A stretch of 63,891 nt of DNA, filler included, from Reticulomyxa filosa (taxonomy: Eukaryota; Protista; Foraminifera): NCBI GenBank assembly GCA_000512085.1. It is 21 parts of 21 records of this genome, joined end to end, with 100 filler letters (N's around TTAATTAATTAA, not from the genome) between each part and the next. Parts side by side here need not be neighbours in the genome. Positions count along the whole stretch, not along the records: positions 11,133 to 18,797 come from ASPP01029371.1; 20 more parts are not named here. The stretch is one strand, 5' to 3'. Under the pieces are notes generated by a model. The model did no database searches, was not told the DNA's origin, and saw only the letters and a list, made by a program, of their open reading frames with translations. This document shows, in pieces, positions 1-18,797 of this stretch (its first letter is position 1; every line of letters begins with the position of its first letter). The position numbers and the translations under genes are program-made.

Positions 1-1360
1 TACTTATCCGAGATGCTGCAACTGCGTCTGGAGCCAGTGGCGGCGAGAAGGAATGTGAGGGTGTTGAGGACAATGTCGCCAAAAGGGGACTGAATGGAGG
101 GGTTCCAAGATGTTGAGAATATAAATGATGTAATTTCTCTTCCTTTGTCTTTGCACTTTTCACAGGAATAGTCGAATCTTCGCTGGCCTTGCTAGGGTCT
201 CTACACGGGCGTGACCCTTGCATAGATGAGGAGACAGGCGCCGACACAGAGACAATTGACTGTATTGGACTTGCTACAGTTTTCTTCGCAGAAGGGTCAG
301 AACATGGGATCAATGACAACTTCGACGGGACGTTTGAAGCTGCATTCCTTGATTGCAAAGGGGAGGATGTAACATTTTGGTCACTCGCTTTAAACGGGGG
401 AGTTTTCATCGGCTCAACCGTGACGTTATTGTTATCCCAGACAGGGCATTCTTGTATGCACAATTTATGTTTGTACCAAACACAACAAGAACTACGTACA
501 TATGTACATATACACATATATAACAGTGTACATCCAGACAGAAACTGTACGTAATCATGTACAAATTTAAAAAAGTAGTTAGATTAACCTTGGTCCGAAT
601 AACAAGCATTGACGTACTCATCACTTCTAATTGCTGTCTGTTCGTATTCCATTTCATATCCGATTTTCTCGTCGTCATCGCGGTCGCGTACTACTTTTTC
701 ATACGTACACATATATACATGTACACATGTGCATGTACACTAGAACAGCTTTTTGGTACAAACAAAATTTATAACCATTGGAATGATGTTTTTGATTGGA
801 ATTCAAATGATTGTGATAATCTGGATGGACATAATACTCATCGCAATATTGGACTTGGTGCTCATATTGTGATGAATACGAATAGCTTTGGCGTGACTTA
901 TTTTTTAAAACTTTCTTTTCCAGTTTTTTTTGACAGGTATCAATCCACGCGTCCCGATGCGAAAAGTAATCTTCCCCATCACGATACTCGCATCCTTTGT
1001 TCAACTGCTTATTATGGCAGTATATTCGAGGCATGTTTTTTACAATTGCTTCTTCATCTCTTTTTTCTGCTGTCTCTTTTTTTCTTTTTCTTTTTCATTA
1101 TCATTTTCGTCGCTCGAGGCGCTTGGAGTGTGTGGTAAATTACGGTTTGATTTTCGGGAGTATCTAATGATTTTGTTTCAAAAGGCATGTTTTGTATGGA
1201 TGTTTAGTGTGTACGTTTTGTGGGTGATTGAGTCAAAAATAAACTTGTTTCTCTTTTTGCATTGATATGCAGCTTTACTGCGATGCTTTACTCGATCTTT
1301 CTTTTGATCATGATCTTCATGCCTTTCGCTATCTTCGCTACTTGTAATTTGATCAGACAT
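1..1360 (-). CDS. Multi-exon hypothetical low-complexity protein, 3'-truncated at the window edge
   Basis: Minus-strand exons join through GT..AG introns in phase (…HSN G|V RDRDDDEK…SDQ|E CPVWDNNN…). The last exon is open from 450 to position 1. One homopolymer frameshift is needed near 1080. No recognisable domain. Confidence 0.55.
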
Positions 1361-2069
1361 GATACCTTGCAGCGAGATCTTTTTTCTTCAATATGAACAA
1401 TTTTTGTACCAAAAAACTCATTTGACCTTTCTAGTAGCTCGTCTATTTCAAATTCCTTTAACAGAAATACCAGCATTACTACAAAAAATAAATCCAAAAT
1501 AACGTACTAAAGCGAAATAGTTTCACTTTTTATTTGTAGTGTTATATTTTAAATCTTTAGTAACACAATAATTTGCGACTTAAACGTCTCTTATGAATTT
1601 TCTCTATTAAAAGCAAATATTTCATTTTAATTTTAAAAAAACGTTTGAAGTACGGCACTTTCAATATAAGTGTTGATCATACACGAAATTCAGAATGCAA
1701 AATTCAACGAAAAATAACAGCCCTAATTTAGCTTGCAAAGATTAATAGAAAGTAGTATTGGAACAACAAAGTAATGTTTTAGGACGGTGATACTACTTAC
1801 GTCGCAATGAAGTCATGACGAATTCAAATATTTCACTTTTTTTAAAATTTAATTTAACAAAAAATCATTTTTCCCACCCCAGATTCTCTTCAAGGTGTCA
1901 CATTTTTTTTTTAAACTAACGTGCTGTCATTTACATTAAGTTTTTATATGATATACTTGCCAATGAAATGTTTTGGTTCAGATGTTGTAGAATGCAAAGA
2001 ATGATAAAATCTTAATAGGCATTGTTGAAAACAAAATGGAATTGATATCTTTGTCTTGGCAGATTGAGA

Positions 2070-3236
2070 TTATCCCCAAAGTCGGATAGATTTATCGTTG
2101 GATGCAGAGGCAATCATGGCACCATTAGGTGAAAAATTTACTACCCCTACACCCAGTGAATGTCCGTTCAATTTTTGAATTTCTTGTCCAGATTTTGCAT
2201 CCCACAATCGAACAGTTTTATCCCAAGAGCAAGATACAATAGTTTCACCATTTGGTGAATATTGTACATCGCATATTGTATCAGTGTGTCCACGCAATAT
2301 TTTCAGCATTTTTTCTAATTTTACATCCCATATCCGAATAGTTTTATCCCATGAACATGATACAATAAACTGACCATCTGGAGAATATTTTGCACCGCGT
2401 ATGTGCTCTGAGTGTCCTGTCAATCGACATATTTCGTTGCCTGATTTTATATCCCATATTCGAATCGTACAATCATTTGAACATGATACAACAGTTTGAC
2501 CATCTGGTGAAAATTGTACATCATTTACTTCACTTGAATGCCCTCTTAATATTTTTATCTCTCTTCCCGATTTTGCGTCCCACAATCTAATAGTATTATC
2601 CCATGAACAAGACACAAAAGTTTGACCGTCTGGCGAAAATTGGACCTTTGCCACGTTTTCTGCATGGCCTTCCAATCTTTTTACGTTTCGTTCTGAGTTC
2701 AAGTTCCACAATCGAATTGTTTTATCTCCTGAGCATGAAACAATTGTACTGCCATCTGGTGAAAATTGTGCATCACTGACCCATTTGGAATGTCCTTTCA
2801 ATGTTTCAATTGATTTTCCTGATTTTACATCCCATATCTGCACTGTTAGATCATTGGAACTCGAAACAATCCTGTCCCCATTTGGTGAAAATCTGACGCT
2901 CCTCACACTGTCCCAATGCCCTTGCAACGTTTTAAGTGCTGAAAAATTTTTGCCTGTTTACATGCAGACTTGTCAATTGTGACGCTGAAACTAAGAAACA
3001 ATAGAAATGTAGCCAACCATAGCACGCAATAATTTTGTTCAAATCGTTAATCCATCCAACACGAACAGACAAAGAACGAACCCAGTTTTCAACAATAAGA
3101 TATATCTTTTGTTCATACTGATTTTTTTCACAAGTCACACGACTTTTCTTTTGTTACAGTTGGTTTTTGTTTGGTTTTGGGATACCAGGTGTATTCTTTG
3201 AACATCCTTCTTATTTTCTGCGATTTGTGTATTCAT
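2070..3236 (-). CDS. WD40-repeat beta-propeller protein (about 7 repeats) with a short N-terminal 'W.R.L....GWI.D.NKII' leader
   Basis: ORF 2070-2927 has regular GH…FSPDG…S.S.D.TIR.WD repeats. Upstream exons (ATG at 3236; 2932-3138 frame) splice in through short introns. Confidence 0.92.
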
Positions 3237-3588
3237 TCCTTATATTTTTTTCCTTTTGACAAAGGAAGATGATAAATATTGTTATGATCAAAAGCTCCTT
3301 TTTGACGGAACTATCGACTTGAACGTTTACAGTGAATTGTTTAAACAAAGCAGATAAAACATAACAATTGGCTGTTCCAGTCAATTGGTTTTCAATGTCC
3401 AATAGTCAAATCTGATGTGACAAGTAAAACACGAAATTTTATTGACATTTTTCCCTCAATATTTCATTTCATTTGATTATTTTGCAACAAAAAAAGTTAG
3501 TGTACAATCCAATGCAAAAATTTATAACTTGCAGCCAGAATTTTTTAAAAAAACTTTTATGTGAACGATTTATCATTTCGTTTCCAAA

Positions 3589-6500
3589 ATGGCAGAAAGA
3601 AAAGAGGAGAAAGACGAAGAAGAAATACAGATATTGGCATTTTTGAAGAACACAGTCAAAATAGATCGTGACGATGCCTCAAATCTCGCCTCTTACTTGC
3701 GTCGAGAGGAAAAAATAACAGAAGGGAAGGACATTTCAATGTTGGAGCCACAACAATGGAAAACAGCTTTTATACATGTGCAATTGAACCCGGCTTCAAA
3801 GAAAAAGCTATTGAAAACGGTGAATAAAATGCGTGAAAGTGAGAACGAGAAACCATTGAATATTGACGAACTAATAAACAACCCTGTACCACAAATGTAT
3901 ATGCCGACATACCTATGTTGACAACAGTGAGAAAAGATAAATGATTGTGTTCTGTCGATACAGATCACACAAGTACGCGCAAATTCTATGTATCAATGGT
4001 AATGAGGCAACAATTATTCTGGAGGTATTTTTTTAAAAAAAGAATGTCTCTGACTCGAATACGTTTTAATGATCAACAGCAAATACAATTAAAATAAAAA
4101 AAAAAAAAAAAGGAACAAATTGGTGAGATTCAGCTTAAATGATGACAGATGGGAAAATATTGATTTAAAGAGTGGAGATGAACTGCTTTGTGAATGTTCA
4201 GGGTCAAATCATGAGTTGAGTGTGAACAATATTAAATTCCCTGTGCCATATGAAAGTGAAGTAAATGAAGATGATGACTCTCAATTTATACTTGTTCAAG
4301 TACATTGCACAAAATCGGTAATATTGCACACAATAACCAAACACCAACATTGCAGCACATTTTTGTAATATTCAATATTGTGAGTGATGTATGAATATCT
4401 TTGTTTGTCAAAGCAACAAGAAACAAAAGTGAAGCTCATGAATGATGGTCAAAAGAAAAAAAAATGGAGAGTTGGAGACAAAGTGAAGTTTCGCTGCAAA
4501 TATCGCAATGACGAATGGACGGCTGTTGATATCGAAATCCTTCAACAAGCTCCTTTGTTTAGTTCTTTGTCTTTTGCACAACAGCAACGACAAAAACAAA
4601 GTGGTGTTGTCTTGCACTTGTATATTAGACGAAGGATAGGAGATATCAAAGCAACTGCAACAGTGAAAAACAAACAAGAAAAGGCTTTTCAAATTTTGAA
4701 TTGGCTGGAACATCCTTTGGAAGGTACTATTTAATCAATATATACACATACATATGTATATATATTTTCTCCAAAAAGTAGAGCCTCAAAGTTGCTTGTG
4801 CACGTTTCAGAAAAGGTCGATTGGAGTAATTTCGAAGATATGAATGTGTCGGATCTCGTCAATCAATACAAAGATGAACACAGCCATTCTTCGCACGAAA
4901 CTGAAAGTAACAACAAATTACAACGTCTGAAAACGCAGATAACATTGGAAGCGATGAAGTGCGTAGTGAGCGAATGTATGAACGAAGAGTGTGGTGTCCC
5001 ACAGGCATTGACAGAACGAATCATTCGAAATCTTAAATTTTCCAGTGAGTTGCCATCTATAGCCGGCTCGAATAGCTCCAACATATCAGATGCAATAGCA
5101 TTGTTGAAAGTATTCATTGACAAGTATCATCACACAAATGAAAAGGATGATTTAACGGACTTGCAAAGAGAGTTGAAACAAATTGAGATCCTCCCACAAT
5201 TGATCGAACAAAAGACTTTAGATAATACGTACTGGATTGTCTCAAAACATATAGAAAATTCACGAAGACTACGAATCTATTTGTATTGTCCAGAATGCAC
5301 TGAGCTCAAACCTGATCGTGTTCGGAGTGTCTTTTTCCTTAATATACCTGAGGGTATGTCCTCTTCATCTTCATCTTCTTCTTCTTTTATAATTTGTAAT
5401 TGATGACTCTCTCTCTCTCTTATTCACTTCGAATAAATGACAACAGCCGATAAGCGATATCCATTAAAACTTGCAAAAGAGGACATTCCTTGGTTATATT
5501 GGAGTGACTTTCAAGTCGCTCCCAACTTTCAATTATTGTGCAGTATATTCGATATAGAAAGAAAAGTCGCAATTGCCACCATTCCTGCTTCTGGTCAAAT
5601 CATTATTGTGGAAGAACAGTCTCTGCGATCCAAATCGAACCAAACACGTGTGGCGATATTAGGTCATATGACGGGAACATCGACAACCAATATCAAACAT
5701 GTGGAGATTTTCAGACATTTGATTCGAGAAATTGAGGACGAAACATCTTTTTGTTTTGCTGTGAATCTTGTCAAAGAGTTAAAGGCGCAAATTGGTCCGT
5801 CTCAATCTGACATCAGTGATGCATCGACTGATATCATTTCAAAGTTGGATAAATTCGATGCGACTCTCAAACAAGTATTATACATTATATTTATGTTATC
5901 TCATGCCTTTTTTTTGTAATATTGAAAAAAGACAAAAACAAAGAAAAAAATTAACAATCATGAATTCAGGTGTATCAAGCACTATTTGTATGCACGCTTT
6001 GGAAAGAATGGGATATGAGGCAATATCTATCTGCAAAACAATTTTTTGTTATTATAAACGCTCTTGTCAAAGAGGAATCATCAAAACAGCCTCATTTATC
6101 GGTCATTCAAACCTTAACACACAATTTTACTGCCTTTGAAGCTAACAATGCATCCATATTGCGCGATAGCATAAGCAATATATCTTGCGCCTCGTTTGAA
6201 AAACTTATGCTAATTCCATGTTTCAATTACTTGGCCTTGTCAAAGTGGGCTACCCAACAAGAAGAATTTTTACATTTTAGTGAAACACTGCGAAATATTG
6301 ACTTTGAAATTGATAACTCGCGGATCGACGAGAAAGTTTTGGCAGAGATTCTCATCTTAGACTTGCGCTTGCGCAAGAACGTTAAACTCCTTCCCAAAAT
6401 CAGTATTGTCAATAATTTCATTTCTGTATTGCAATATCATCGTCATCACATCGAATATCTTGTACAATTGTCAATTAACAACACCCATGAGAAAATTGAA

Positions 6501-11132: not shown

Positions 11133-11962
11133 GTGGTATTGTGGGTAATACCAATAAATTGAGCAGGTGGAGGAGCTTCAATGTTGGCGATCCACTCAGT
11201 CTTGGCATAATTTATCTCAATACCATGCGATTGTTCGAGTGTTCCCAATGAAACCATTGCTTGTGTAATTGTTGCTGAAGAAGTTGCAGCCAGCGTTAGA
11301 TCATCGTGATATGCAGCGTGATAGATATTATTTAATCCGGATAATGCGGTCTTTAGGGCGTCTGCTAGTACGATGGCGAAGAGAGCTCCCCCTAAAGGAT
11401 CGCCCTGGTGGACACCTGACTGAGATAGTATCGACGATCCGTTAGGTAGGAAAAGAGTTGTGTGCGAAGAGTAGCATCCTTTGACGTATCCAAACAATTC
11501 GGGTATTTCTTTTCTAACCAGCTCAATGACTCTGGATCTTTTGCATGAATTAAAGGCATTCTTGAAATCGACTTTGACTGCAGCTGCATCTTTGATCGGT
11601 CTAATGTGCTGGAGGACGGCCTTAAAGCCATGGATGAATAGTTCGATGCCTGCCTTAACGTTAATGCCGAATTGATTGGGGCCCACAATGCGCTTAATCT
11701 TTTCGGCATGCCTTTTCATCAAAATTGCGCCCGCGGATCTCCTCAACAATGACCCAATTGCTATTGGTCTTGGACTACCATCGGGCTTGGCGATCCCAAT
11801 TAGCCTTGCTCCATATGCGATGGGGGCTGCACTTTGACAGACCATTCCGTTAATAATTAACGTCGTTACCTTGGCCCAATTGGATAGTGTACCGGATTCA
11901 TATTCGAATGGAACAAGATCAATTAGATGCTGGGCAGCGAACAGGTCTACGCCTCCTGCTGA
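11133..11962 (-). other. Non-LTR reverse transcriptase domain of ORF2
   Basis: Motifs SAGGVD…HL, KPDGSPRPIAIGSLLRR, QFGINVKAGIE, KVDFKNAFNS, GVHQGDPLGGALF, AYHDD (11300-11311) and GIEINYAKTE. The RPIAxG/QFG/NAFNS pattern is typical of CRE/SLACS/Cnl1/MoTeR-type RTs. Confidence 0.95.
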
Positions 11963-14900
11963 TGTTCTTCCCAATTTTCTGGTATAAGCGATTAGTTCGT
12001 CTACCGATATGGGGTCGTGTGCGGGGATAGGGGCCAGTGTGTGAATGACATCATCGGATTCCAAAGAATGCATTAGTTCTATGGGTGGGGCCTCCGGTGG
12101 GTGTTTCTGTTGCAGTTGTTGAATGGTGTTTTCATCGTATTTTATGGGTTGGCTGGGGGTCAATGCTTTGAAGGCTTTTGATAATTCACCCAACGCCGTT
12201 AGCTTGATAGCCTTTGCGTGTGATGCGTTCGTTTTTGCTTGTTTGGATGGGTTCAATTCTCTAGCTTCATTCGCCGCTATGATTGCGTTAGAATGTTCGC
12301 AAAAATCTTTCCACAATTTCAGCAAATTGTTTTCTTTCCATAATTTTATTCTGCTTATAATAGCCTTGGTAGTTGCGTTAGCGTGTCTGGAGCCCCCTCT
12401 TCCCGGGTCCCATAATATAAGCCTTGTGAAAAGAAGCCATTTGGTCCATGCTGCATCGTCGTTGTTTGTTGCCACTTCTCTAAGAATCCATGCCGTTGTC
12501 GATGCGATTGAGCTTCGTGCATTTTTAGGGACGCGACCAATAATTTTGGCTGGTTTGTTGATAATCTCCTCCATGGAGGGTGGTTGCCAATTACTACTTT
12601 CATCTTCGTACTTCTGCTCGGCAGATTGATGTGACCTGGAACGGTGATTCCGGAAGGCCCTTTTCTGGATGACCATATCTTCATGGCACTTCTTGTGCAT
12701 ATTATCCCATGCGACCGTACTTGGTAATATTTGCCTACATCTGTGACAAATGATTCTGCCAAATGCTTGAAAGTACGATTGTGGTACGCGCGCCCCGGCT
12801 TCGTCCGACATGTGTGTGTTGACGTGGATATGGAGCCCTGCTTCGGTTTTGAGTACCGAGCTGCATCCGTGAACCGGGCATTCAAAGGAGTTAGCCTTTC
12901 TGCTTGGGATATCGGTTGCTTGCTGCGGGGGATCCGGAGAGTGAATTGGCATGACCGTGAATAGCTCGTCGCGTTCGAATGAAATGTCGGAGTTGTCATG
13001 GTTAATTGACTCCGTATTGTGTGTATGTTCCGTGTTTGGAGGTTGATCTGCAATTATATTCGTGTTGGGATCCGTTGATTGAAAGAAATGGCCGCCTATG
13101 GAAAAAACATTTTCGATATCGTGTGGGTCTGCCATGTGATTGCTGTTATAATTATCAAACAATTTACGCGGTTCATTATGGTGTATGTTGTCATTAGGGA
13201 TTGTGCGTGGCGGTTCAACGAATAGACTGCGTCTAACACTGCCATTGGTGAGTGCGTTGTCAGCGCCCTGTGCATGACCATTTGAATGCATCGTGCTTGA
13301 TATTTTGGGAGATGACTTGGAGGTCTTGTGGCGAGCATCCTTCTTTTCCGTTTTGTTATTTCTGTATAAATGAACCGCGTCTGGATCGATGTCAGGTTGT
13401 TCGTCGTTGCATTTCATGTCGTTCCCGATTGATCTCGTGTTGGTGCTATGTTGGATGATAGCTTTCGCAGGTGCTTGATTCAAGTTCGACCATGTGCGAT
13501 TCGTATCATAATCGTATGAGTCCAAAGGAGGCGTCACATTCTTTTCACGTTCCCCTACATGATCGTGCACAAGGTGATGATGCACCTTTTTGATTGCAAG
13601 TGATGGGCTCAGGGCGGTATCGAGGACGGCGGAGGACAGAAGACTGGATGCGCTTTGTTGTTGTTTTTTTGATGTTACTGTTACATCAACTTTTCGCGTT
13701 TTGGGGGAAATGCTCGTTCTGTGGTCATCGTTTGATTGTTGCGCTTCTTTAAGCGATGAAGATGGAATGCAGTGGCTAGGTTGTGGGCTTCCATTCGTGG
13801 GCTGGGTTTGGGGTTTATCATGTTGAATTGTAAAATGTGTGTGTGGAGGCGTCAGTTCGTTTGATTTTGTGTGTTCCGCACTGTGTGTAGCTTCATTGAA
13901 ATTATTTTCATTGTTATTGGTGCTTGTATTCTTTTCACCGTTTGATTCGTCGGTAGGCCGTTGTAGTTGTTCCTTTTCCGGTGGGCCTGTTAAGACTATG
14001 TTAAGTTCCTTCGGCAATACTTTGATATGAGAAATTTCTGCAGCAAATTGGAGAATTTCGTCAGTTGAGGATGCCACTCTAACTGTGGGATTAATTACAA
14101 ACATTAATGATATGTTGGATGACCTTGCCACACATGATAGTAAAGCTTTCCGCCATTCGCCACAACCGCTCTGGTTGCGATAATTCGTTTTGGATTTGTT
14201 GAGATTTTTAAAAATAGTTCGGAATTGTTTTAGGCCTGATGAAACACATGCCGATTCAAGAGATTGCAGAATTTCATTATGGATGTAAATCTGATTTTGA
14301 AACCCTTTATGATGTCGAGTTAAATTATCTAACGTTTCACCTACTAAATTAACAATAAAAATGTTACTTTTCATTTGTGCGACCTCATGGTCATTGTTAA
14401 CGAAAGTTTGACAAATTGACAATTGGAATATTGTGTGGCCTGATGGTGGAGAGTGTCCTGTGGTTTGAACTTGGAGTTGGGAATGAGCAGCTTTCCTAAT
14501 ATCAACGAGTGCATTTTCAAGGTCTGCAATATTATCAATATTTCTTTTGGATAGCTTCGATGGGTTGATTGACGAATGGCCTTTCTTCTGGTCGTTGGAG
14601 ATTGCATTAATATTGGCATCGTTTAATAAGTCATATGCACGAATTTTTGTTACATTTGTGCCGTAAAATTCGACTGCCGTAATGTTTAACAAAATGGTCA
14701 GTGCGCTAGTGCATCTGAACAATTCACCCACTATTGATTGTGTTGTCGGAGTTAAGACATCTCTTATCGGTGGCAGGCCCGGTGCGAGTAGTTGACCGTA
14801 TATGCAGACCATACCGGAGTAACCATCAAGAGCCATTGCAACAGTTGGGCCATTAATTTGTAGAATGGCATCTTTGAGGTCTGCTGATGGGCCAAAGGCC

Positions 14901-15259
14901 TTATCAAAGATGTAGTGATTACCCGCTCGTGATGTGGTTCCGGATCTTGTGGATAATATATTGTCGGTGACTTTGATGTATTGTTCCTTTGTTCCGCTTA
15001 ATTCAGTATCCTCAATTAGTGCGTATGTCTTGATGGGGATACCCTTTTGCGTCCCGGCCCATGATAAAGATGAAACTTTGCTGTCGGAGCAAACACCAAA
15101 ACGATGCATATTCAAAGATGGTTTGTGATTTGAAGCTGCTGCTTGCGAATGCGTCATACTTGCGACGATTGGTTGCCACTGTTGCTTTGGTACGAAAGAG
15201 CTAGTGGTGTCACTGGCAGCATCGGCTGTATACGAAGTACAGGATACCCGTGGGTCCAT
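11133..15259 (-). CDS. ORF2: degenerate kinesin motor domain, disordered linker, C2H2 zinc fingers, reverse transcriptase (truncated in the RT C-terminal region)
   Basis: Uninterrupted frame of about 1375 codons. Start is either ATG 15259 or ATG 15157. Domains are listed separately. Confidence 0.9.
12683..12886 (-). other. C2H2 zinc finger plus a second Cys/His finger in ORF2
   Basis: FECPVHGCSSVLKTEAGLHIHVNTH (C-x4-C-x12-H-x3-H), followed by CHRC…HKKC. Confidence 0.85.
14021..15037 (-). other. Kinesin motor-like domain (ORF2 aa ~75-413) with degenerate nucleotide motifs
   Basis: Ordered matches to the kinesin consensus: YIFDKAFGP, PTVAMALDGYSGMVCIYGQ, AVEFYG…AYDLL, SGHTIFQLSI, SNIFIVNLVGE, ESACVSSGL, ISLMFVINP…STDEILQFA. 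Confidence 0.85.
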
Positions 15260-18200
15260 GCTCTTTCTTTGCTATTAATGATCTCTATTGAGTCGTTGAT
15301 GGGCTGCGGTTTTGCGATGCCGGTTGTTTGGAGAAAGGTCCTTGTAAGGAGATTGTCAGCGACAAATATGTGAGGTTTCTCGACATGCGGCTGGTCTTGC
15401 TTTGCCTGCTTCGGCGCGGGGCTGCATTGCGATGGGGACTGGTTAGTTTGCAAGTGCTCCCTTTGTATATGGGCCTGGTTTTCGATTATTACCACTGCGG
15501 ATGATATGGGCCATGGTGGGGTTGTTTTTTCCACCTCTAAACTCGCTGTCTGGATGTCGATTGTTGGATGATCAATACGTTGAGTCAGTGCGGGTGGTAT
15601 GACGGCTGGTGTTCCGGTGGACAGTGATATTTCAACGGTCTGGCTTAGAACAATGGGAACTGGAACTTGGCTTGGATATTCGCGGGTGGACGGCTTTGGT
15701 GTGCTTGACGAATGTAAATCACTTGTTGTGACAGCTGGTAGTGCCAATTGGCTTCGAGGGGGATAAAGATTGGTAGCTTCGGGGATGGATGGTACACTAT
15801 GCAATGCGGCACCGTTGATGCTCGACACAGTTGGCGCTGTTGAGCGTACTTCAGGGACGCTTTCGGCGGAAGATGTTGGATGATTTTTGGTGGACTTACG
15901 ACTTGGCTTACGCGATAGCCAGTGGTCCATCTGAATGGTAGCCTCGCGGCTTTGTTTCTCCGGATTATTTTGTTGCGTGGTTCGGTTGGTGGCTTTCATG
16001 TAACGGGACGATGTGCTTCTGTGAGGGAGATTCCTGGTCTTCAAGTTTTGTTTCGGAATTACTACGAAAAATTCCTCGTCCTTCGTGTCAGGTTCGGAAT
16101 CGATATCGAATAATGCGTCCAGTTGCTCGCTCGGTGTACTGGACTCGTTATCATCAAAATCTTTGCCTCTAGGAAGTTCCGGGCTGGGGTATGTTATTAA
16201 ATTCGACGAATGGCAGTCGTTGTGCGAAGTCGATATGTGGATGGTAGTACTGCTATTGGATATCTTCTTTGTATATTGCGGGACTGCATGACTGGGACTG
16301 GGTTCTAAAACCACTGATCCAATGGGTGTTTCACGAGTCGCTGTTTGGAGAAGTTCGCCAGGGACCATGTCGGGTCTGAAATCGAGCGGATCACGTTGGG
16401 GCAGGGCCGATGGAGATGATGTCGATTTTTGTTGGTTTTGGTGAGGCATACAGTTGAAGATTCCTGTGGTTGAAATGCCTTCACAGAAGTTTTGTGACGC
16501 GTTCTCGAGTTTGGCAAGCGTGGTTGGTACTTGGCTCATTTGTGGTACCTTTTGTGATGTTGGTGGTATGGAATTCTCCCACTGGAACTCTATGTCTTTC
16601 GTTCCGTGCCTCCTGGGCTCATTCTGGATTGGAGCGTCTGCGATACTTTGAATCGCGGGAAGCGGTCCTGTTGACGGTAATGGTTTAACTAGTGGTGAAG
16701 TGATTGGCCTTATTGTCGGTATTTGGGGGCCTTGCGCTTGATCGCACTCACGTCGTGAAGGTTGTAGCGAATTCGCGATTTGGGAACAATGCAGTTTGGA
16801 TATGATGGCAGTGATAGAGTTGGCAATAATTTCTTGATTATAAGTTGGTACCTGTTGACTGGTTTGCCCGTTGGGAGATATGGAGGGGAAAGCTCTTTCG
16901 TCTTGTAGCTTGGTGGTACTTGTCACATGTTGACTGGAGGGGATATTCCGAGAGTTTTCCGCCAGTATCCGATGCTTGACGATTCCGCTACTACTATTGG
17001 GCCATGTGATTGCTGCTAGGGAAGTGGCATCGGGAGGAACGACTGCCGAAAGCGATGGAATGCTTGCTGGATCACTAGAGGACGGTGCTTGCGCGGAGGG
17101 TGGAAGTGGTCGCGTGGTGGGGACGGATTGTGTCGTTTGGCTAGAAAAAGCCATCCCCGTGGGTGCGATCGAATTTACCATTGATTCATCTCCAAGTGTT
17201 TGCGGGGGGGTGAATGGAGCCCATGTTGTGCCAAACTTCGGCCTCGGGATGTCTGTCGGTGTCAGGTGGGCGGGTATTTTAAGCTCAATCTTTTGCCGGT
17301 GGCCTGTGTAGTGGTGATTGAATGCATCATTACTACTGCCACCTGTGTAGACTGTCGGTGAAATTTGATAATCCACAAACGATTGGTCGCACGGGGACGA
17401 TTGCTTTTGACTTTGGTATAATAAATGCGATTCGCAATTGACTCTGGATGCATTAAGGTTTTGTGTTGTCCTTGTTGTTGAATGCAGGTAATGAGCGTTT
17501 CGAGGCGAGGTGGTGCATGTTTGTCGTTGCTCTATGCCCGGGAGAATCCAAGAGGGATCAGTCGCAGTACCTCCTTTATTACTACCGATTGTCGGTTGAG
17601 TATTGTGCAAAATCATCGTGGTGGACGGATAAGAGTTTGTTTTTTCAATACGCTTTTTCTTTTGCGTGGTACTATTGGTTTCGCAGTGATGCCAAGTTGC
17701 TGTGCCAGTTTCGCGTGTGCTTCCGCCTCCCGTTCCAGTTCCGCCTCCGCTATCCTTACTTTTCCGTCTTCGACTTCCTTTTCCGTTTTCGTTTTCGCTT
17801 TCACTTGACTTTTCACCACTGTTTCTAGTCCAACTTGGACTCCGGCGTCCTCTAGTGTGTTCCATGCCACTTTGAAAATGACTTCTGCTTCTACTATTAA
17901 GGATAGTAGTGCTGCAATCTCGCAAGGGGTCCCTTTGGGACTTGCCACTCCTTGATGATCCGATGATGAGTTGATGATGATGGTCGAACTTTTTATCCGG
18001 GGTTCCCAATGAACTTTGATCGTAGTCTGCCAAATTCTTACTTGTCGGATTTTTCTTTTTTGATTTCATTTCGCCCCTTTTTGAATTTTGATCTGGTTGA
18101 TAATTCTCTTTTTGATACACTTTTGTGCCATTTGATGATGATTTAGCATTTTTTGCTTGTTTATACGTCGATATTTTGCTTTGCTCACTTTGGATTTCAT

Positions 18201-18441
18201 TTTCAACAATTTCTTTGCTTGACATTCCGGATACTTTTTCAAAATCTGTAAATAGATTTTTGGGGATGTGGACGGGAGTGGGAGTGGGAGTATGAGTGTA
18301 ATTCAATTCTGAAAGCTGCGATGATGCGTCGCATTTTTTAAACAATGTCAATGGACGGTCTATTGTTTGCAAGTTGGTTAGTCCAGTATTTGACTTTTTA
18401 AGAGCAAAGTTGTTATCATTTACTTCGGCTATTTCTTGCAT
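15154..18441 (-). CDS. ORF1 of the retroelement, about 1095 aa, Ser/Pro/Thr/Gln-rich and apparently disordered
   Basis: Uninterrupted frame from ATG 18441 to TGA 15156-15154. No introns. No CCHC knuckle or RRM recognised. Confidence 0.75.
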   Translation of the reverse strand: MQEIAEVNDNNFALKKSNTGLTNLQTIDRPLTLFKKCDASSQLSELNYTHTPTPTPVHIPKNLFTDFEKVSGMSSKEIVENEIQSEQSKISTYKQAKNAKSSSNGTKVYQKENYQPDQNSKRGEMKSKKKNPTSKNLADYDQSSLGTPDKKFDHHHQLIIGSSRSGKSQRDPLRDCSTTILNSRSRSHFQSGMEHTRGRRSPSWTRNSGEKSSESENENGKGSRRRKSKDSGGGTGTGGGSTRETGTATWHHCETNSTTQKKKRIEKTNSYPSTTMILHNTQPTIGSNKGGTATDPSWILPGIEQRQTCTTSPRNAHYLHSTTRTTQNLNASRVNCESHLLYQSQKQSSPCDQSFVDYQISPTVYTGGSSNDAFNHHYTGHRQKIELKIPAHLTPTDIPRPKFGTTWAPFTPPQTLGDESMVNSIAPTGMAFSSQTTQSVPTTRPLPPSAQAPSSSDPASIPSLSAVVPPDATSLAAITWPNSSSGIVKHRILAENSRNIPSSQHVTSTTKLQDERAFPSISPNGQTSQQVPTYNQEIIANSITAIISKLHCSQIANSLQPSRRECDQAQGPQIPTIRPITSPLVKPLPSTGPLPAIQSIADAPIQNEPRRHGTKDIEFQWENSIPPTSQKVPQMSQVPTTLAKLENASQNFCEGISTTGIFNCMPHQNQQKSTSSPSALPQRDPLDFRPDMVPGELLQTATRETPIGSVVLEPSPSHAVPQYTKKISNSSTTIHISTSHNDCHSSNLITYPSPELPRGKDFDDNESSTPSEQLDALFDIDSEPDTKDEEFFVVIPKQNLKTRNLPHRSTSSRYMKATNRTTQQNNPEKQSREATIQMDHWLSRKPSRKSTKNHPTSSAESVPEVRSTAPTVSSINGAALHSVPSIPEATNLYPPRSQLALPAVTTSDLHSSSTPKPSTREYPSQVPVPIVLSQTVEISLSTGTPAVIPPALTQRIDHPTIDIQTASLEVEKTTPPWPISSAVVIIENQAHIQREHLQTNQSPSQCSPAPKQAKQDQPHVEKPHIFVADNLLTRTFLQTTGIAKPQPINDSIEIINSKERAWTHGYPVLRIQPMLPVTPLALSYQSNSGNQSSQV

Positions 18442-18732
18442 TGCAAGATAACAAAAGAAATACAAAGTTGTTTTTGGAAGTATCTAATCAACAAAATGTA
18501 GCTAAAATAAAAAACAAAGAAAAACAAAAAAGAACAAAAAAACAAAAGGGTATTCATTTAAACTTTTGTTTTTTTTTTTAAACAAAAATTGACTTAAAAT
18601 TATAATTATTTTTTTTAAATAAAATTTTAATAAAAAATAAATATATATTTAATAAAAATTAAATTTTTTTTTAAAAATTAATAAAAAAAGAAATTTTAAT
18701 ATAACTTAAAACATAAAAAGTTAAAAGCTAAA

Positions 18733-18797
18733 TTAGGGGCTTAGGGCTTAGGGCTTAGGGCTTAGGGCTTAGGGCTTAGGGCTAGGCTAGGCTAGGC
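18733..18797 (+). repeat. Telomere-like tandem repeat: TTAGGGGC (TTAGGGC)6 (TAGGC)3
   Basis: Read directly. The G-rich strand runs 5'->3' toward the contig end, as expected at a chromosome end. Confidence 0.85.

What the first reader, a model, noticed from the sequence alone, without database searches (positions are those of the whole stretch)
15154..18797. Retroelement sits at an apparent chromosome end, 5' end outward, capped by telomeric repeats
Seen: ORF1 starts about 290 nt from a G-rich tandem repeat that runs to the contig end, and the element is transcribed away from that end. Established: this 5'-distal polarity is that of Drosophila HeT-A/TART, bdelloid Athena elements and Magnaporthe MoTeR. 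MoTeR and Cryptococcus Cnl1 are telomere-associated CRE-like elements. Inference: this is a telomere-targeting family in this lineage, possibly contributing to end maintenance.
Basis: partly seen in the sequence, partly recalled or inferred. Interest (0 to 1): 0.82.

Follow-up and report, generated by a model that had tools for sequence, protein, structure and literature searches.

The report
Kinesin-carrying retrotransposon beside telomere-like repeat
This is the front 7.3 kb of a jumping gene (an R2/CRE-type LINE) of the giant amoeboid foraminiferan Reticulomyxa filosa, lying head-outward next to a short telomere-like repeat; that its family targets chromosome ends could not be tested, but its replication protein carries a conserved, ATPase-dead kinesin motor domain, which I found reported for no other retrotransposon.

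Summary
The piece is Reticulomyxa filosa contig ASPP01029371.1. A perfect (TTAGGGC)6.7 tract, G-strand pointing outward, runs to the contig end. 290 nt inside it starts a minus-strand ORF1 (1095-1103 aa), which overlaps ORF2 (at least 1375 aa, cut by the contig edge).

ORF2 carries a C2H2 finger and a reverse transcriptase. This is therefore a restriction-like-endonuclease non-LTR retrotransposon of the R2/CRE group.

The telomere-targeting inference rests on this one copy. Nine related loci contain no such repeat, but their contigs stop too early to test it. R. filosa telomeres are undescribed. In metagenome contigs the same heptamer array is mostly interstitial.

The unexpected result is at the ORF2 N-terminus: a kinesin motor domain (Pfam 3e-10; AlphaFold model matching only kinesins at about 1e-19). 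Its P-loop and switch motifs are lost in this copy and intact in a divergent paralogue. The domain is under purifying selection (dN/dS 0.11). Six R. filosa gene models contain it, one annotated "kinesin family member 4". My verdict: a new variant of a known kind, with telomere specificity unproven.

The parts
18731..18797 (+). Telomere-like tract: one TTAGGGGC, six perfect TTAGGGC, then three TAGGC units. The G-strand points to the contig end.
18466..18730 (-). AT-rich spacer (12% G+C) between the repeat and ORF1. Either the element's 5' UTR or subtelomeric host DNA; it has no counterpart in the other copies.
15154..18465 (-). ORF1: 1103 aa from TTG (1095 aa from the ATG at 18441). Rich in S/T/P/Q, basic around aa 100-300, no Pfam family and no homologue in the 600-1900 aa candidate range searched. 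There is only a weak match upstream of the truncated kinesin region in paralogue L002.
15196..15269 (-). Nucleotide block at the ORF2 start, 82% identical to L001 and L003 where the rest is about 66%. Homology among copies begins sharply here. It lies within the ORF1/ORF2 overlap (15154-15259).
11133..15259 (-). ORF2, 1375 aa, open to the contig edge (3' part missing). The order is kinesin-like domain, disordered linker, zinc fingers, RT.
14024..14965 (-). Kinesin motor-derived domain (ORF2 aa 99-412). It keeps the kinesin fold but has lost the Walker A P-loop (14768-14800), switch I (14426-14449) and switch II (14333-14353).
12683..12880 (-). C2H2 zinc finger (aa 794-816, 12812-12880) and a second Cys/His finger (aa 838-859, 12683-12748). 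Both are conserved in the paralogues.
11144..11794 (-). Reverse transcriptase (RVT_1, aa 1156-1372), with the YHDD active-site motif at 11300-11311. Cut by the contig edge just after.

Best explanation
The piece is the 5' 7.3 kb of an apparently intact two-ORF non-LTR retrotransposon of Reticulomyxa filosa, of the restriction-like-endonuclease (R2/CRE-type) group. Shown: ORF1 is a long, low-complexity orphan protein. Shown: ORF2 is a polyprotein with an N-terminal kinesin motor-derived domain, a disordered linker, C2H2 and Cys/His fingers, and an RT. By homology with full-length paralogues, a CCHC plus PD-(D/E)XK endonuclease follows the RT. Inferred: the element copies itself by target-primed reverse transcription, in which the endonuclease nicks a DNA site chosen by the fingers and the RT extends from the nick. 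Inferred: the kinesin-derived domain, which in this lineage can no longer bind or hydrolyse ATP but is kept by selection, works as a microtubule- or tubulin-binding tether that couples the ORF2 protein/RNA particle to the cell's very large microtubule transport network or to the spindle. Shown: this copy lies with its 5' end 290 nt from a terminal TTAGGGC tract that has telomere polarity. That geometry is what addition to a chromosome end or insertion into telomere repeats would give. Whether the family does this regularly is open.
For: Organism and contig. RT. R2Bm as the only PDB relative of the RT. CCHC plus RHD..E..RPGD..D endonuclease motif in L001, L005, L006, L007 and L009; the motif pattern is taken from PMC12857005. 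The R. filosa copies form one RT clade with 100% support. Kinesin homology: Pfam 39.9 bits over profile positions 25-327; PDB kinesin heavy chain 7e-7; AlphaFold2 pLDDT 78 and pTM 0.81; the 50 listed Foldseek hits are all kinesin motors at about 1e-19. The fusion is real: uninterrupted ORFs join the kinesin domain to RT in W, L001 and L008, kinesin to C2H2 in L004, and a truncated copy exists in L002. Selection: dN/dS is 0.11 in the kinesin part, against 0.15 in the finger/pre-RT part and 0.42 in the linker (L001 against L002). Motif series: the P-loop is intact in L004, GKT is retained in L008, and it is lost in W and L001. Repeat and polarity.
Against: The 3' third of this copy is missing, so its own endonuclease and 3' junction are unseen. 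ORF1 has no clear homologue in the other copies, so its membership of the element rests on four things: the overlap, the shared strand composition, the codon-usage correlation (0.69 against 0.50-0.54 for the off-frames), and one weak hit in L002. Microtubule binding is untested. A sister lineage (L005-L007, L009) lacks the kinesin domain, so the domain is not essential to the family. No RNA or read data could be obtained.
Confidence: 0.8

Rival explanations
1. One reading: the family specifically targets telomeres (as MoTeR, FoTeR or Cnl1 do) and may contribute to end maintenance.
For: The 5'-outward polarity and the closeness to a TTAGGG-like terminal tract match MoTeR and FoTeR (PMC7367193, PMC12857005). 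The family has the finger-plus-REL architecture typical of site-specific elements.
Against: There is only one instance. No TTAGGGC units occur in nine related loci, including seven 3' flanks, although all of those flanks are short. The 5' end has no telomere-like variant repeats. The RT does not group with the fungal or SLACS-annotated sequences available. A sister metagenomic element ends in (AAT)6, not in telomere repeats.
Confidence: 0.3
2. The tract is a true telomere, but the element is an ordinary dispersed or subtelomere-accumulating copy. Its position and orientation (a 1-in-2 chance) are coincidental, and it was picked out because a scan of many windows will find such cases.
For: The other family contigs show varied, AT-rich, non-telomeric flanks. 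The family is divergent and multi-lineage. A 265-nt AT-rich spacer with no counterpart in other copies separates ORF1 from the repeat, so it could be host DNA.
Against: A random insertion within 300 nt of a chromosome end is rare a priori. The element is full-length at its 5' side, as expected if the end was capped soon after insertion.
Confidence: 0.4
3. The TTAGGGC tract is an interstitial microsatellite, possibly the element's insertion target, and not a chromosome end.
For: The tract is only 67 nt at the end of a short-read contig. In JGI metagenome contigs, arrays of three or more TTAGGGC units (in the loci fetched with a four-unit pattern) were internal 121 times, terminal-outward 8 times and terminal-inward 5 times. 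Telomeres of R. filosa are undescribed (PMC13746701). Some endonuclease-bearing relatives target microsatellites (my own knowledge of Dong/R4-type elements).
Against: The unit is one base away from the canonical TTAGGG. The polarity is correct. The array degenerates only at the very end, as read ends do.
Confidence: 0.25
4. The kinesin-RT link is an artefact: an assembly chimera, or a host kinesin gene interrupted by a retroelement.
For: The assembly is highly fragmented. NCBI annotates one such model as 'kinesin family member 4'.
Against: The same domain order occurs in one open frame on at least four independent contigs that are only 44-66% identical. The C2H2 region homologous to the retroelement follows an intact motor in L004. 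The domain is under purifying selection. The four retroelement kinesin domains fall on one side of a branch in the kinesin tree.
Confidence: 0.03

Closest known systems
MoTeR1 (Magnaporthe) and FoTeR (Fusarium) telomeric retrotransposons
   Same: Non-LTR elements with an RT followed by a CCHC/REL endonuclease. They are oriented with the 5' end nearest the chromosome end and capped by telomere repeats (PMC7367193, PMC12857005).
   Different: Those are single-ORF elements found at telomeres in every copy, in arrays separated by telomere repeats, with telomere-like variant repeats at the 5' end. Here there is one copy, an AT-rich 5' end, an extra ORF1 and a kinesin domain. No close RT relationship is shown.
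CRE1/CRE2, SLACS and CZAR (CRE clade)
   Same: An N-terminal C2H2 finger, an RT, and a C-terminal endonuclease motif of the C..C..H..C, RHD, E, R/KPD, D/E type (pattern from PMC12857005). SLACS and CZAR also have an upstream ORF1 (my own knowledge).
   Different: Those target spliced-leader genes. The motif spacings differ slightly: C-x5-C, RPGD, and 15 residues to the last D. Clade membership was not tested against curated references.
R2 (Bombyx mori R2Bm, PDB 8gh6 and 8ibw)
   Same: The only solved structures that match the RT. Same overall order: fingers, RT, then CCHC plus restriction-like endonuclease. The mechanism is target-primed reverse transcription.
   Different: R2 has a single ORF and is specific for 28S rDNA. 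The similarity is weak (E 4e-5 over about 150 residues). R2 has no motor-derived domain.
HeT-A / TART / TAHRE of Drosophila
   Same: 5'-distal polarity at chromosome ends (PMC5537684).
   Different: Those are APE-lineage (Jockey clade) elements that replace telomerase repeats altogether. Here a telomerase-type repeat caps the end.
Catalytically inactive kinesin-like proteins (for example KIF26-type, from my own knowledge)
   Same: A kinesin fold with degenerate nucleotide-binding motifs, thought to bind microtubules without moving.
   Different: Those are cellular proteins, whereas this domain is part of a retrotransposon polyprotein. Binding is untested here.
NeSL-type and related RLE elements with acquired accessory domains
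   Same: Precedent that this group picks up N-terminal host domains. Relatives found here carry Ulp1, UCH, PHD or SAP domains.
   Different: None of the listed hits outside R. filosa in the RT search carries a kinesin domain together with RT. No full-length match to this element's kinesin domain outside R. filosa, among 1.84 billion representative proteins, was a kinesin-RT fusion; the outside hits I scanned were plain kinesins without RT.

Membership tests
Restriction-like-endonuclease (R2-group) non-LTR retrotransposons | Reverse transcriptase of the non-LTR type | tested here: met
   RVT_1 at E 1e-17 with a YHDD motif. The only PDB relatives are R2Bm.
Restriction-like-endonuclease (R2-group) non-LTR retrotransposons | CCHC motif plus PD-(D/E)XK endonuclease C-terminal to the RT | tested here: inconclusive
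   This copy is cut before that region. The motif is present in all five full-length paralogues of the same RT clade.
Restriction-like-endonuclease (R2-group) non-LTR retrotransposons | N-terminal zinc finger(s) and no APE endonuclease | tested here: met
   C2H2 at aa 794-816 plus a second finger. Pfam finds no endonuclease/exonuclease/phosphatase domain.
CRE clade (CRE1/2, SLACS, CZAR, Cnl1, MoTeR) | RT groups with curated CRE-clade references | tested here: inconclusive
   No curated references were available. The R. filosa clade plus one metagenomic sister sits apart from the SLACS-annotated and Kwoniella proteins.
CRE clade (CRE1/2, SLACS, CZAR, Cnl1, MoTeR) | REL motif C-x(1-3)-C-x(7-8)-H-x(3-4)-C-x(9-10)-RHD/N ... 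E ... R/KPD ... D/E | tested here: inconclusive
   All the residues are present in the paralogues but several spacings fall just outside the published ranges (PMC12857005).
Telomere-targeting retrotransposons (MoTeR/FoTeR type) | Copies consistently at chromosome ends, 5' end outward | tested here: inconclusive
   One copy fits. Nine other loci carry no repeat but are too short to judge. No reads could be obtained.
Telomere-targeting retrotransposons (MoTeR/FoTeR type) | 3' end joined to telomere repeats, or arrays separated by repeats | tested here: inconclusive
   The 3' end of this copy is missing. Seven paralogue 3' flanks of 150-450 nt show no TTAGGGC, and the contigs end within or at the 3' UTR.
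Telomere-targeting retrotransposons (MoTeR/FoTeR type) | Telomere-like variant repeats at the element's 5' terminus (a MoTeR feature) | tested here: not met
   The 265 nt next to the repeat are 12% G+C and contain no telomere-like units.
Kinesin motor domain superfamily | Kinesin motor fold | tested here: met
   Pfam PF00225 over profile positions 25-327. The AlphaFold2 model matches kinesin motors with TM 0.6-0.77 and E about 1e-19.
Kinesin motor domain superfamily | Walker A P-loop (GxxxxGK[ST]), switch I (SSRSH) and switch II (DLAGSE) | tested here: not met
   In W and L001 all three are degenerate. They are intact or nearly so in L004, and GKT plus SSRGH are kept in L008.
Kinesin motor domain superfamily | Microtubule binding and motility | not testable with these tools
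   Needs biochemistry. A YRN motif corresponding to the kinesin YRD/N motif is retained.

The most novel reading that the evidence does not exclude
A retrotransposon lineage captured a host kinesin motor and kept it, first as a working motor (L004 type) and later as an ATPase-dead microtubule tether (this copy). Its RNA-protein particle could then ride or dock on the very fast microtubule transport system of a giant multinucleate foraminiferan to reach nuclei, spindle or chromosome ends. Part of the reported 'kinesin gene expansion' of R. filosa would then be retrotransposon copies.
Probability: 0.35. Interest if true: 0.8.

Novelty: new variant of a known kind. Interest (0 to 1): 0.6.

Why it matters
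There are three points.

(1) Retrotransposon particles have to reach the nucleus. A selected cytoskeletal motor domain inside a LINE-type polyprotein would be a new solution to that problem. Microtubule co-sedimentation and ATPase assays can test it directly.

(2) The expansion of kinesin-domain genes in R. filosa has been read as an adaptation to transport in a huge cell (PMC4758236, citing the genome paper). At least six kinesin-domain gene models are retroelement ORFs, so that count needs re-examination.

(3) TTAGGGC is a candidate telomere repeat for a foraminiferan, a group whose telomeres are undescribed (PMC13746701). If the family proves to be telomere-associated, it would take MoTeR-like biology outside fungi.

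Tried and rejected
- The look-up of sequencing runs listed no run, so read laying could not be used and neither expression nor read-level telomere evidence was obtained.
- The R. filosa genome paper is not held.
- The ORF1 searches gave nothing usable: word search in the 600-1900 aa candidate range, Pfam in three pieces, and the ESM Atlas (all scores under 0.9). The exact-sequence look-up of ORF1 found no gene.
- Rfam at E up to 1 found nothing in the piece, so no HDV-like or other ribozyme.
- The conserved block at the ORF2 start does not fold better than shuffles (z = -1.2). I dropped the idea of a structured RNA signal there, and I saw no canonical slippery heptamer by eye.
- The metagenome scan for (TTAGGGC)4 gave over 120 loci. 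None encodes a relative of this element, apart from one weak RT hit in L070.
- The 5' spacer has no similarity to upstream regions of L002, L004 or L008.
- tblastx of the ORF1 DNA against all loci gave only marginal L002 hits.
- A family-specific kinesin HMM does not detect the domain in L005-L007 or L009. Their N-terminal roughly 800 aa look disordered.
- The Atlas search with the whole ORF2 gave no usable hit.
- A literature search for kinesin together with RLE non-LTR elements found no paper.
- L004 has one in-frame stop. In the tools its two pieces were searched separately, and in scripts it was read through with X only.
Full report
**Origin of the piece.** Places 11133-18797 are the whole of contig ASPP01029371.1 (7665 bp) of the Reticulomyxa filosa assembly GCA_000512085.1. 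The word search returned the contig's own gene model RFI_32957, and the look-up returned the contig itself. R. filosa is a naked freshwater foraminiferan (Rhizaria).

**The observation.**
- The plus strand ends with one TTAGGGGC, six perfect TTAGGGC and three TAGGC units (18731-18797). The G-rich strand runs 5'->3' to the contig end, which is the polarity of a real telomere.
- A spacer of 12% G+C (18466-18730) follows.
- Then comes a minus-strand ORF1, 18465/18441 to 15154. It has no stop in 1103 codons where composition-matched shuffles have 31 or more.
- ORF2 starts at 15259, overlaps ORF1 by 106 nt in another frame, and stays open for 1375 codons to the contig edge.

**What the element is.** ORF2 has the following parts:
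- RVT_1 at aa 1156-1372, with a YHDD motif.
- A C2H2 finger at aa 794-816 and a second Cys/His finger at aa 838-859.

Protein searches recovered nine further R. filosa loci of the same family. Five of them (L001, L005, L006, L007, L009) run to a stop codon. Downstream of the RT they carry a CCHC motif followed by RHD, E, RPGD and D. This is the restriction-like endonuclease pattern given for SLACS, CRE and MoTeR in PMC12857005, with slightly different spacings.

The only solved structures matching the RT are Bombyx R2. In an RT-to-endonuclease tree the R. filosa copies form one clade (SH-aLRT 100) with one metagenomic sister. They sit apart from a clade that includes a SLACS-annotated protein and relatives carrying Ulp1, UCH, PHD or SAP domains.

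The element is therefore securely a restriction-like-endonuclease non-LTR retrotransposon. "CRE-like" is reasonable but not demonstrated.

**ORF1.** It is rich in S, T, P and Q, has no Pfam family and no homologue in the 600-1900 aa candidate range searched, and gave no Atlas lead. I assign it to the element on four grounds:
- It overlaps ORF2.
- It shares the A-rich, T-poor coding strand.
- Its codon usage correlates with that of ORF2 (0.69, against 0.50-0.54 for its own off-frames).
- It gives a weak hit upstream of the truncated kinesin region of L002 (E about 1e-6).

Homology among W, L001 and L003 begins sharply at the ORF2 start, in an 82%-identical block. Upstream sequences are unrelated, yet they stay open and in frame in L001 and L003. 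I read this as a fast-evolving disordered N-terminal or ORF1 region. The kinesin-to-finger linker is equally unalignable between the same copies.

**The unexpected part: a kinesin domain.** ORF2 aa 99-412 is a kinesin motor domain.
- Pfam PF00225 scores 39.9 bits over profile positions 25-327.
- Drosophila kinesin heavy chain matches at 7e-7.
- An AlphaFold2 model built on a 22-row alignment has pLDDT 78 and pTM 0.81. Its 50 listed Foldseek matches in the PDB are all kinesin motors, at E about 1e-19.

The fusion is not an artefact. One uninterrupted frame joins kinesin, fingers and RT in W, L001 and L008. L004 joins a kinesin domain to the homologous C2H2 region, and L002 is a truncated copy. 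These contigs are only 44-66% identical.

The motor motifs form a series:

| Copy | P-loop | Switch I | Switch II |
|---|---|---|---|
| L004 | GQTGTGKS (intact) | SSRGH | DLASSE |
| L008 | GKT kept | SSRGH | degenerate |
| W, L001 | lost | lost | lost |

Even so, the dead domain evolves under purifying selection. Between L001 and L002, dN/dS is 0.11, against 0.15 for the finger/pre-RT part and 0.42 for the linker.

The four retroelement kinesin domains fall on one side of a branch in a kinesin tree. Support is 83 and the branches are long, so a single capture is compatible but not proven. Their nearest outside relatives are plain N-terminal-motor kinesins of 600-800 aa from metagenomes, plus one from the radiolarian Astrolonche.

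Outside R. filosa I found no kinesin-RT fusion. In the RT search, only R. filosa proteins among the listed hits carry both PF00225 and PF00078. The exhaustive search of 1.84 billion representatives with this domain returned only 50 hits, and the outside hits I scanned are plain kinesins without RT. I found no paper describing such a fusion.

A sister lineage (L005-L007, L009) has an unrelated, disordered N-terminal region instead.

**Mechanism.**
- Shown: the domain content and its conservation.
- Inferred from the biology of R2 and CRE: the fingers choose a DNA site, the endonuclease nicks it, and the RT primes on the nick.
- Inferred, and the weakest step: the ATPase-dead kinesin fold acts as a microtubule or tubulin tether for the ORF2/RNA particle. 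R. filosa moves organelles along microtubules at up to 20 µm/s (PMC2113829). A particle that binds this network, or the spindle, could reach the many nuclei of the syncytium.

**Telomere association.** The geometry matches MoTeR and FoTeR, whose 5' ends always face the chromosome end (PMC7367193, PMC12857005). It is also what priming from a telomeric 3' end followed by telomerase capping would give. But the evidence is a single copy.
- None of the nine related loci has two or more TTAGGGC units.
- Those contigs stop inside the ORF or 80-260 nt upstream of it, which is less than the 290-nt spacer seen here. They also stop within the 3' UTR. The test therefore has no power.
- The 5' spacer has no counterpart elsewhere and contains no telomere-like variant repeats.
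- Telomeres of R. filosa are undescribed (PMC13746701).
- In JGI metagenome contigs fetched with a four-unit pattern, arrays of three or more TTAGGGC units were internal 121 times and terminal-outward only 8 times. The heptamer array alone is therefore not diagnostic.
- No sequencing run could be listed, so read-level tests were impossible.

My estimates are about 0.6-0.65 that the tract is a true telomere and about 0.3 that the family targets telomeres.

**Verdict.** The new result is a kinesin-derived domain under selection inside a LINE-type ORF2. At least six R. filosa kinesin-domain gene models are retroelement ORFs: RFI_32957, RFI_29435, RFI_34301, RFI_32840, RFI_30086, and the model annotated "kinesin family member 4". 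This bears on the published view that R. filosa amplified its kinesin genes for intracellular transport (PMC4758236).

Noticed in passing
window 14768-14800 (ORF2 aa 154-164) and protein P0001: The NCBI gene model RFI_32957 splices out the stretch holding the degenerate P-loop as an 'intron' and starts 34 codons inside ORF2. The continuous ORF is the better reading. This explains the 93% identity of the window to its own gene model.
   Followed up: partly
L008 (ASPP01002760.1) 1-3627, protein P0061: A retroelement ORF (kinesin domain, then finger, then RT) is annotated in NCBI as 'kinesin family member 4, partial'. Counts of R. filosa kinesin genes probably include retrotransposon copies.
   Followed up: partly
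L004 (ASPP01026273.1) 95-2341: This divergent family member has intact P-loop, switch I and switch II motifs, followed by the retroelement-type C2H2 region. There is one in-frame stop at 1070-1072, and the contig ends before the RT. It may represent the state soon after capture of the motor.
   Followed up: partly
window 15196-15269; L001 592-643; L003 1006-1081: A nucleotide block at the ORF2 start is about 82% identical between lineages that are otherwise about 66% identical, with unrelated sequence immediately upstream. It has no significant RNA structure (z = -1.2) and its function is unknown.
   Followed up: partly
L005, L006, L007, L009: This sister lineage of the same RT clade lacks the kinesin domain. 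Instead it has an N-terminal region of about 800 aa, mostly disordered, with short conserved acidic/serine motifs and a Q-rich repeat.
   Followed up: partly
L010-L129 (JGI metagenome contigs): (TTAGGGC)n arrays are widespread in environmental contigs and mostly interstitial. A few contigs (L027, L050, L084, L090, L091, L115) end in them with outward polarity, so some uncultured eukaryotes may use this heptamer as their telomere.
   Followed up: no
L131 (Ga0452205_117652) about 4491-4508: The closest element outside R. filosa (P0059, about 30% identity) is followed, after its ORF, by an (AAT)6 run and then unrelated sequence. That resembles the 3' tails of microsatellite-targeting RLE elements.
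   Followed up: no
L008 5418-5429: This copy ends in a poly(A) run exactly at the contig end. The other sublineages show no poly(A) within the available 3' UTRs, so 3' tail types may differ within the family.
   Followed up: no
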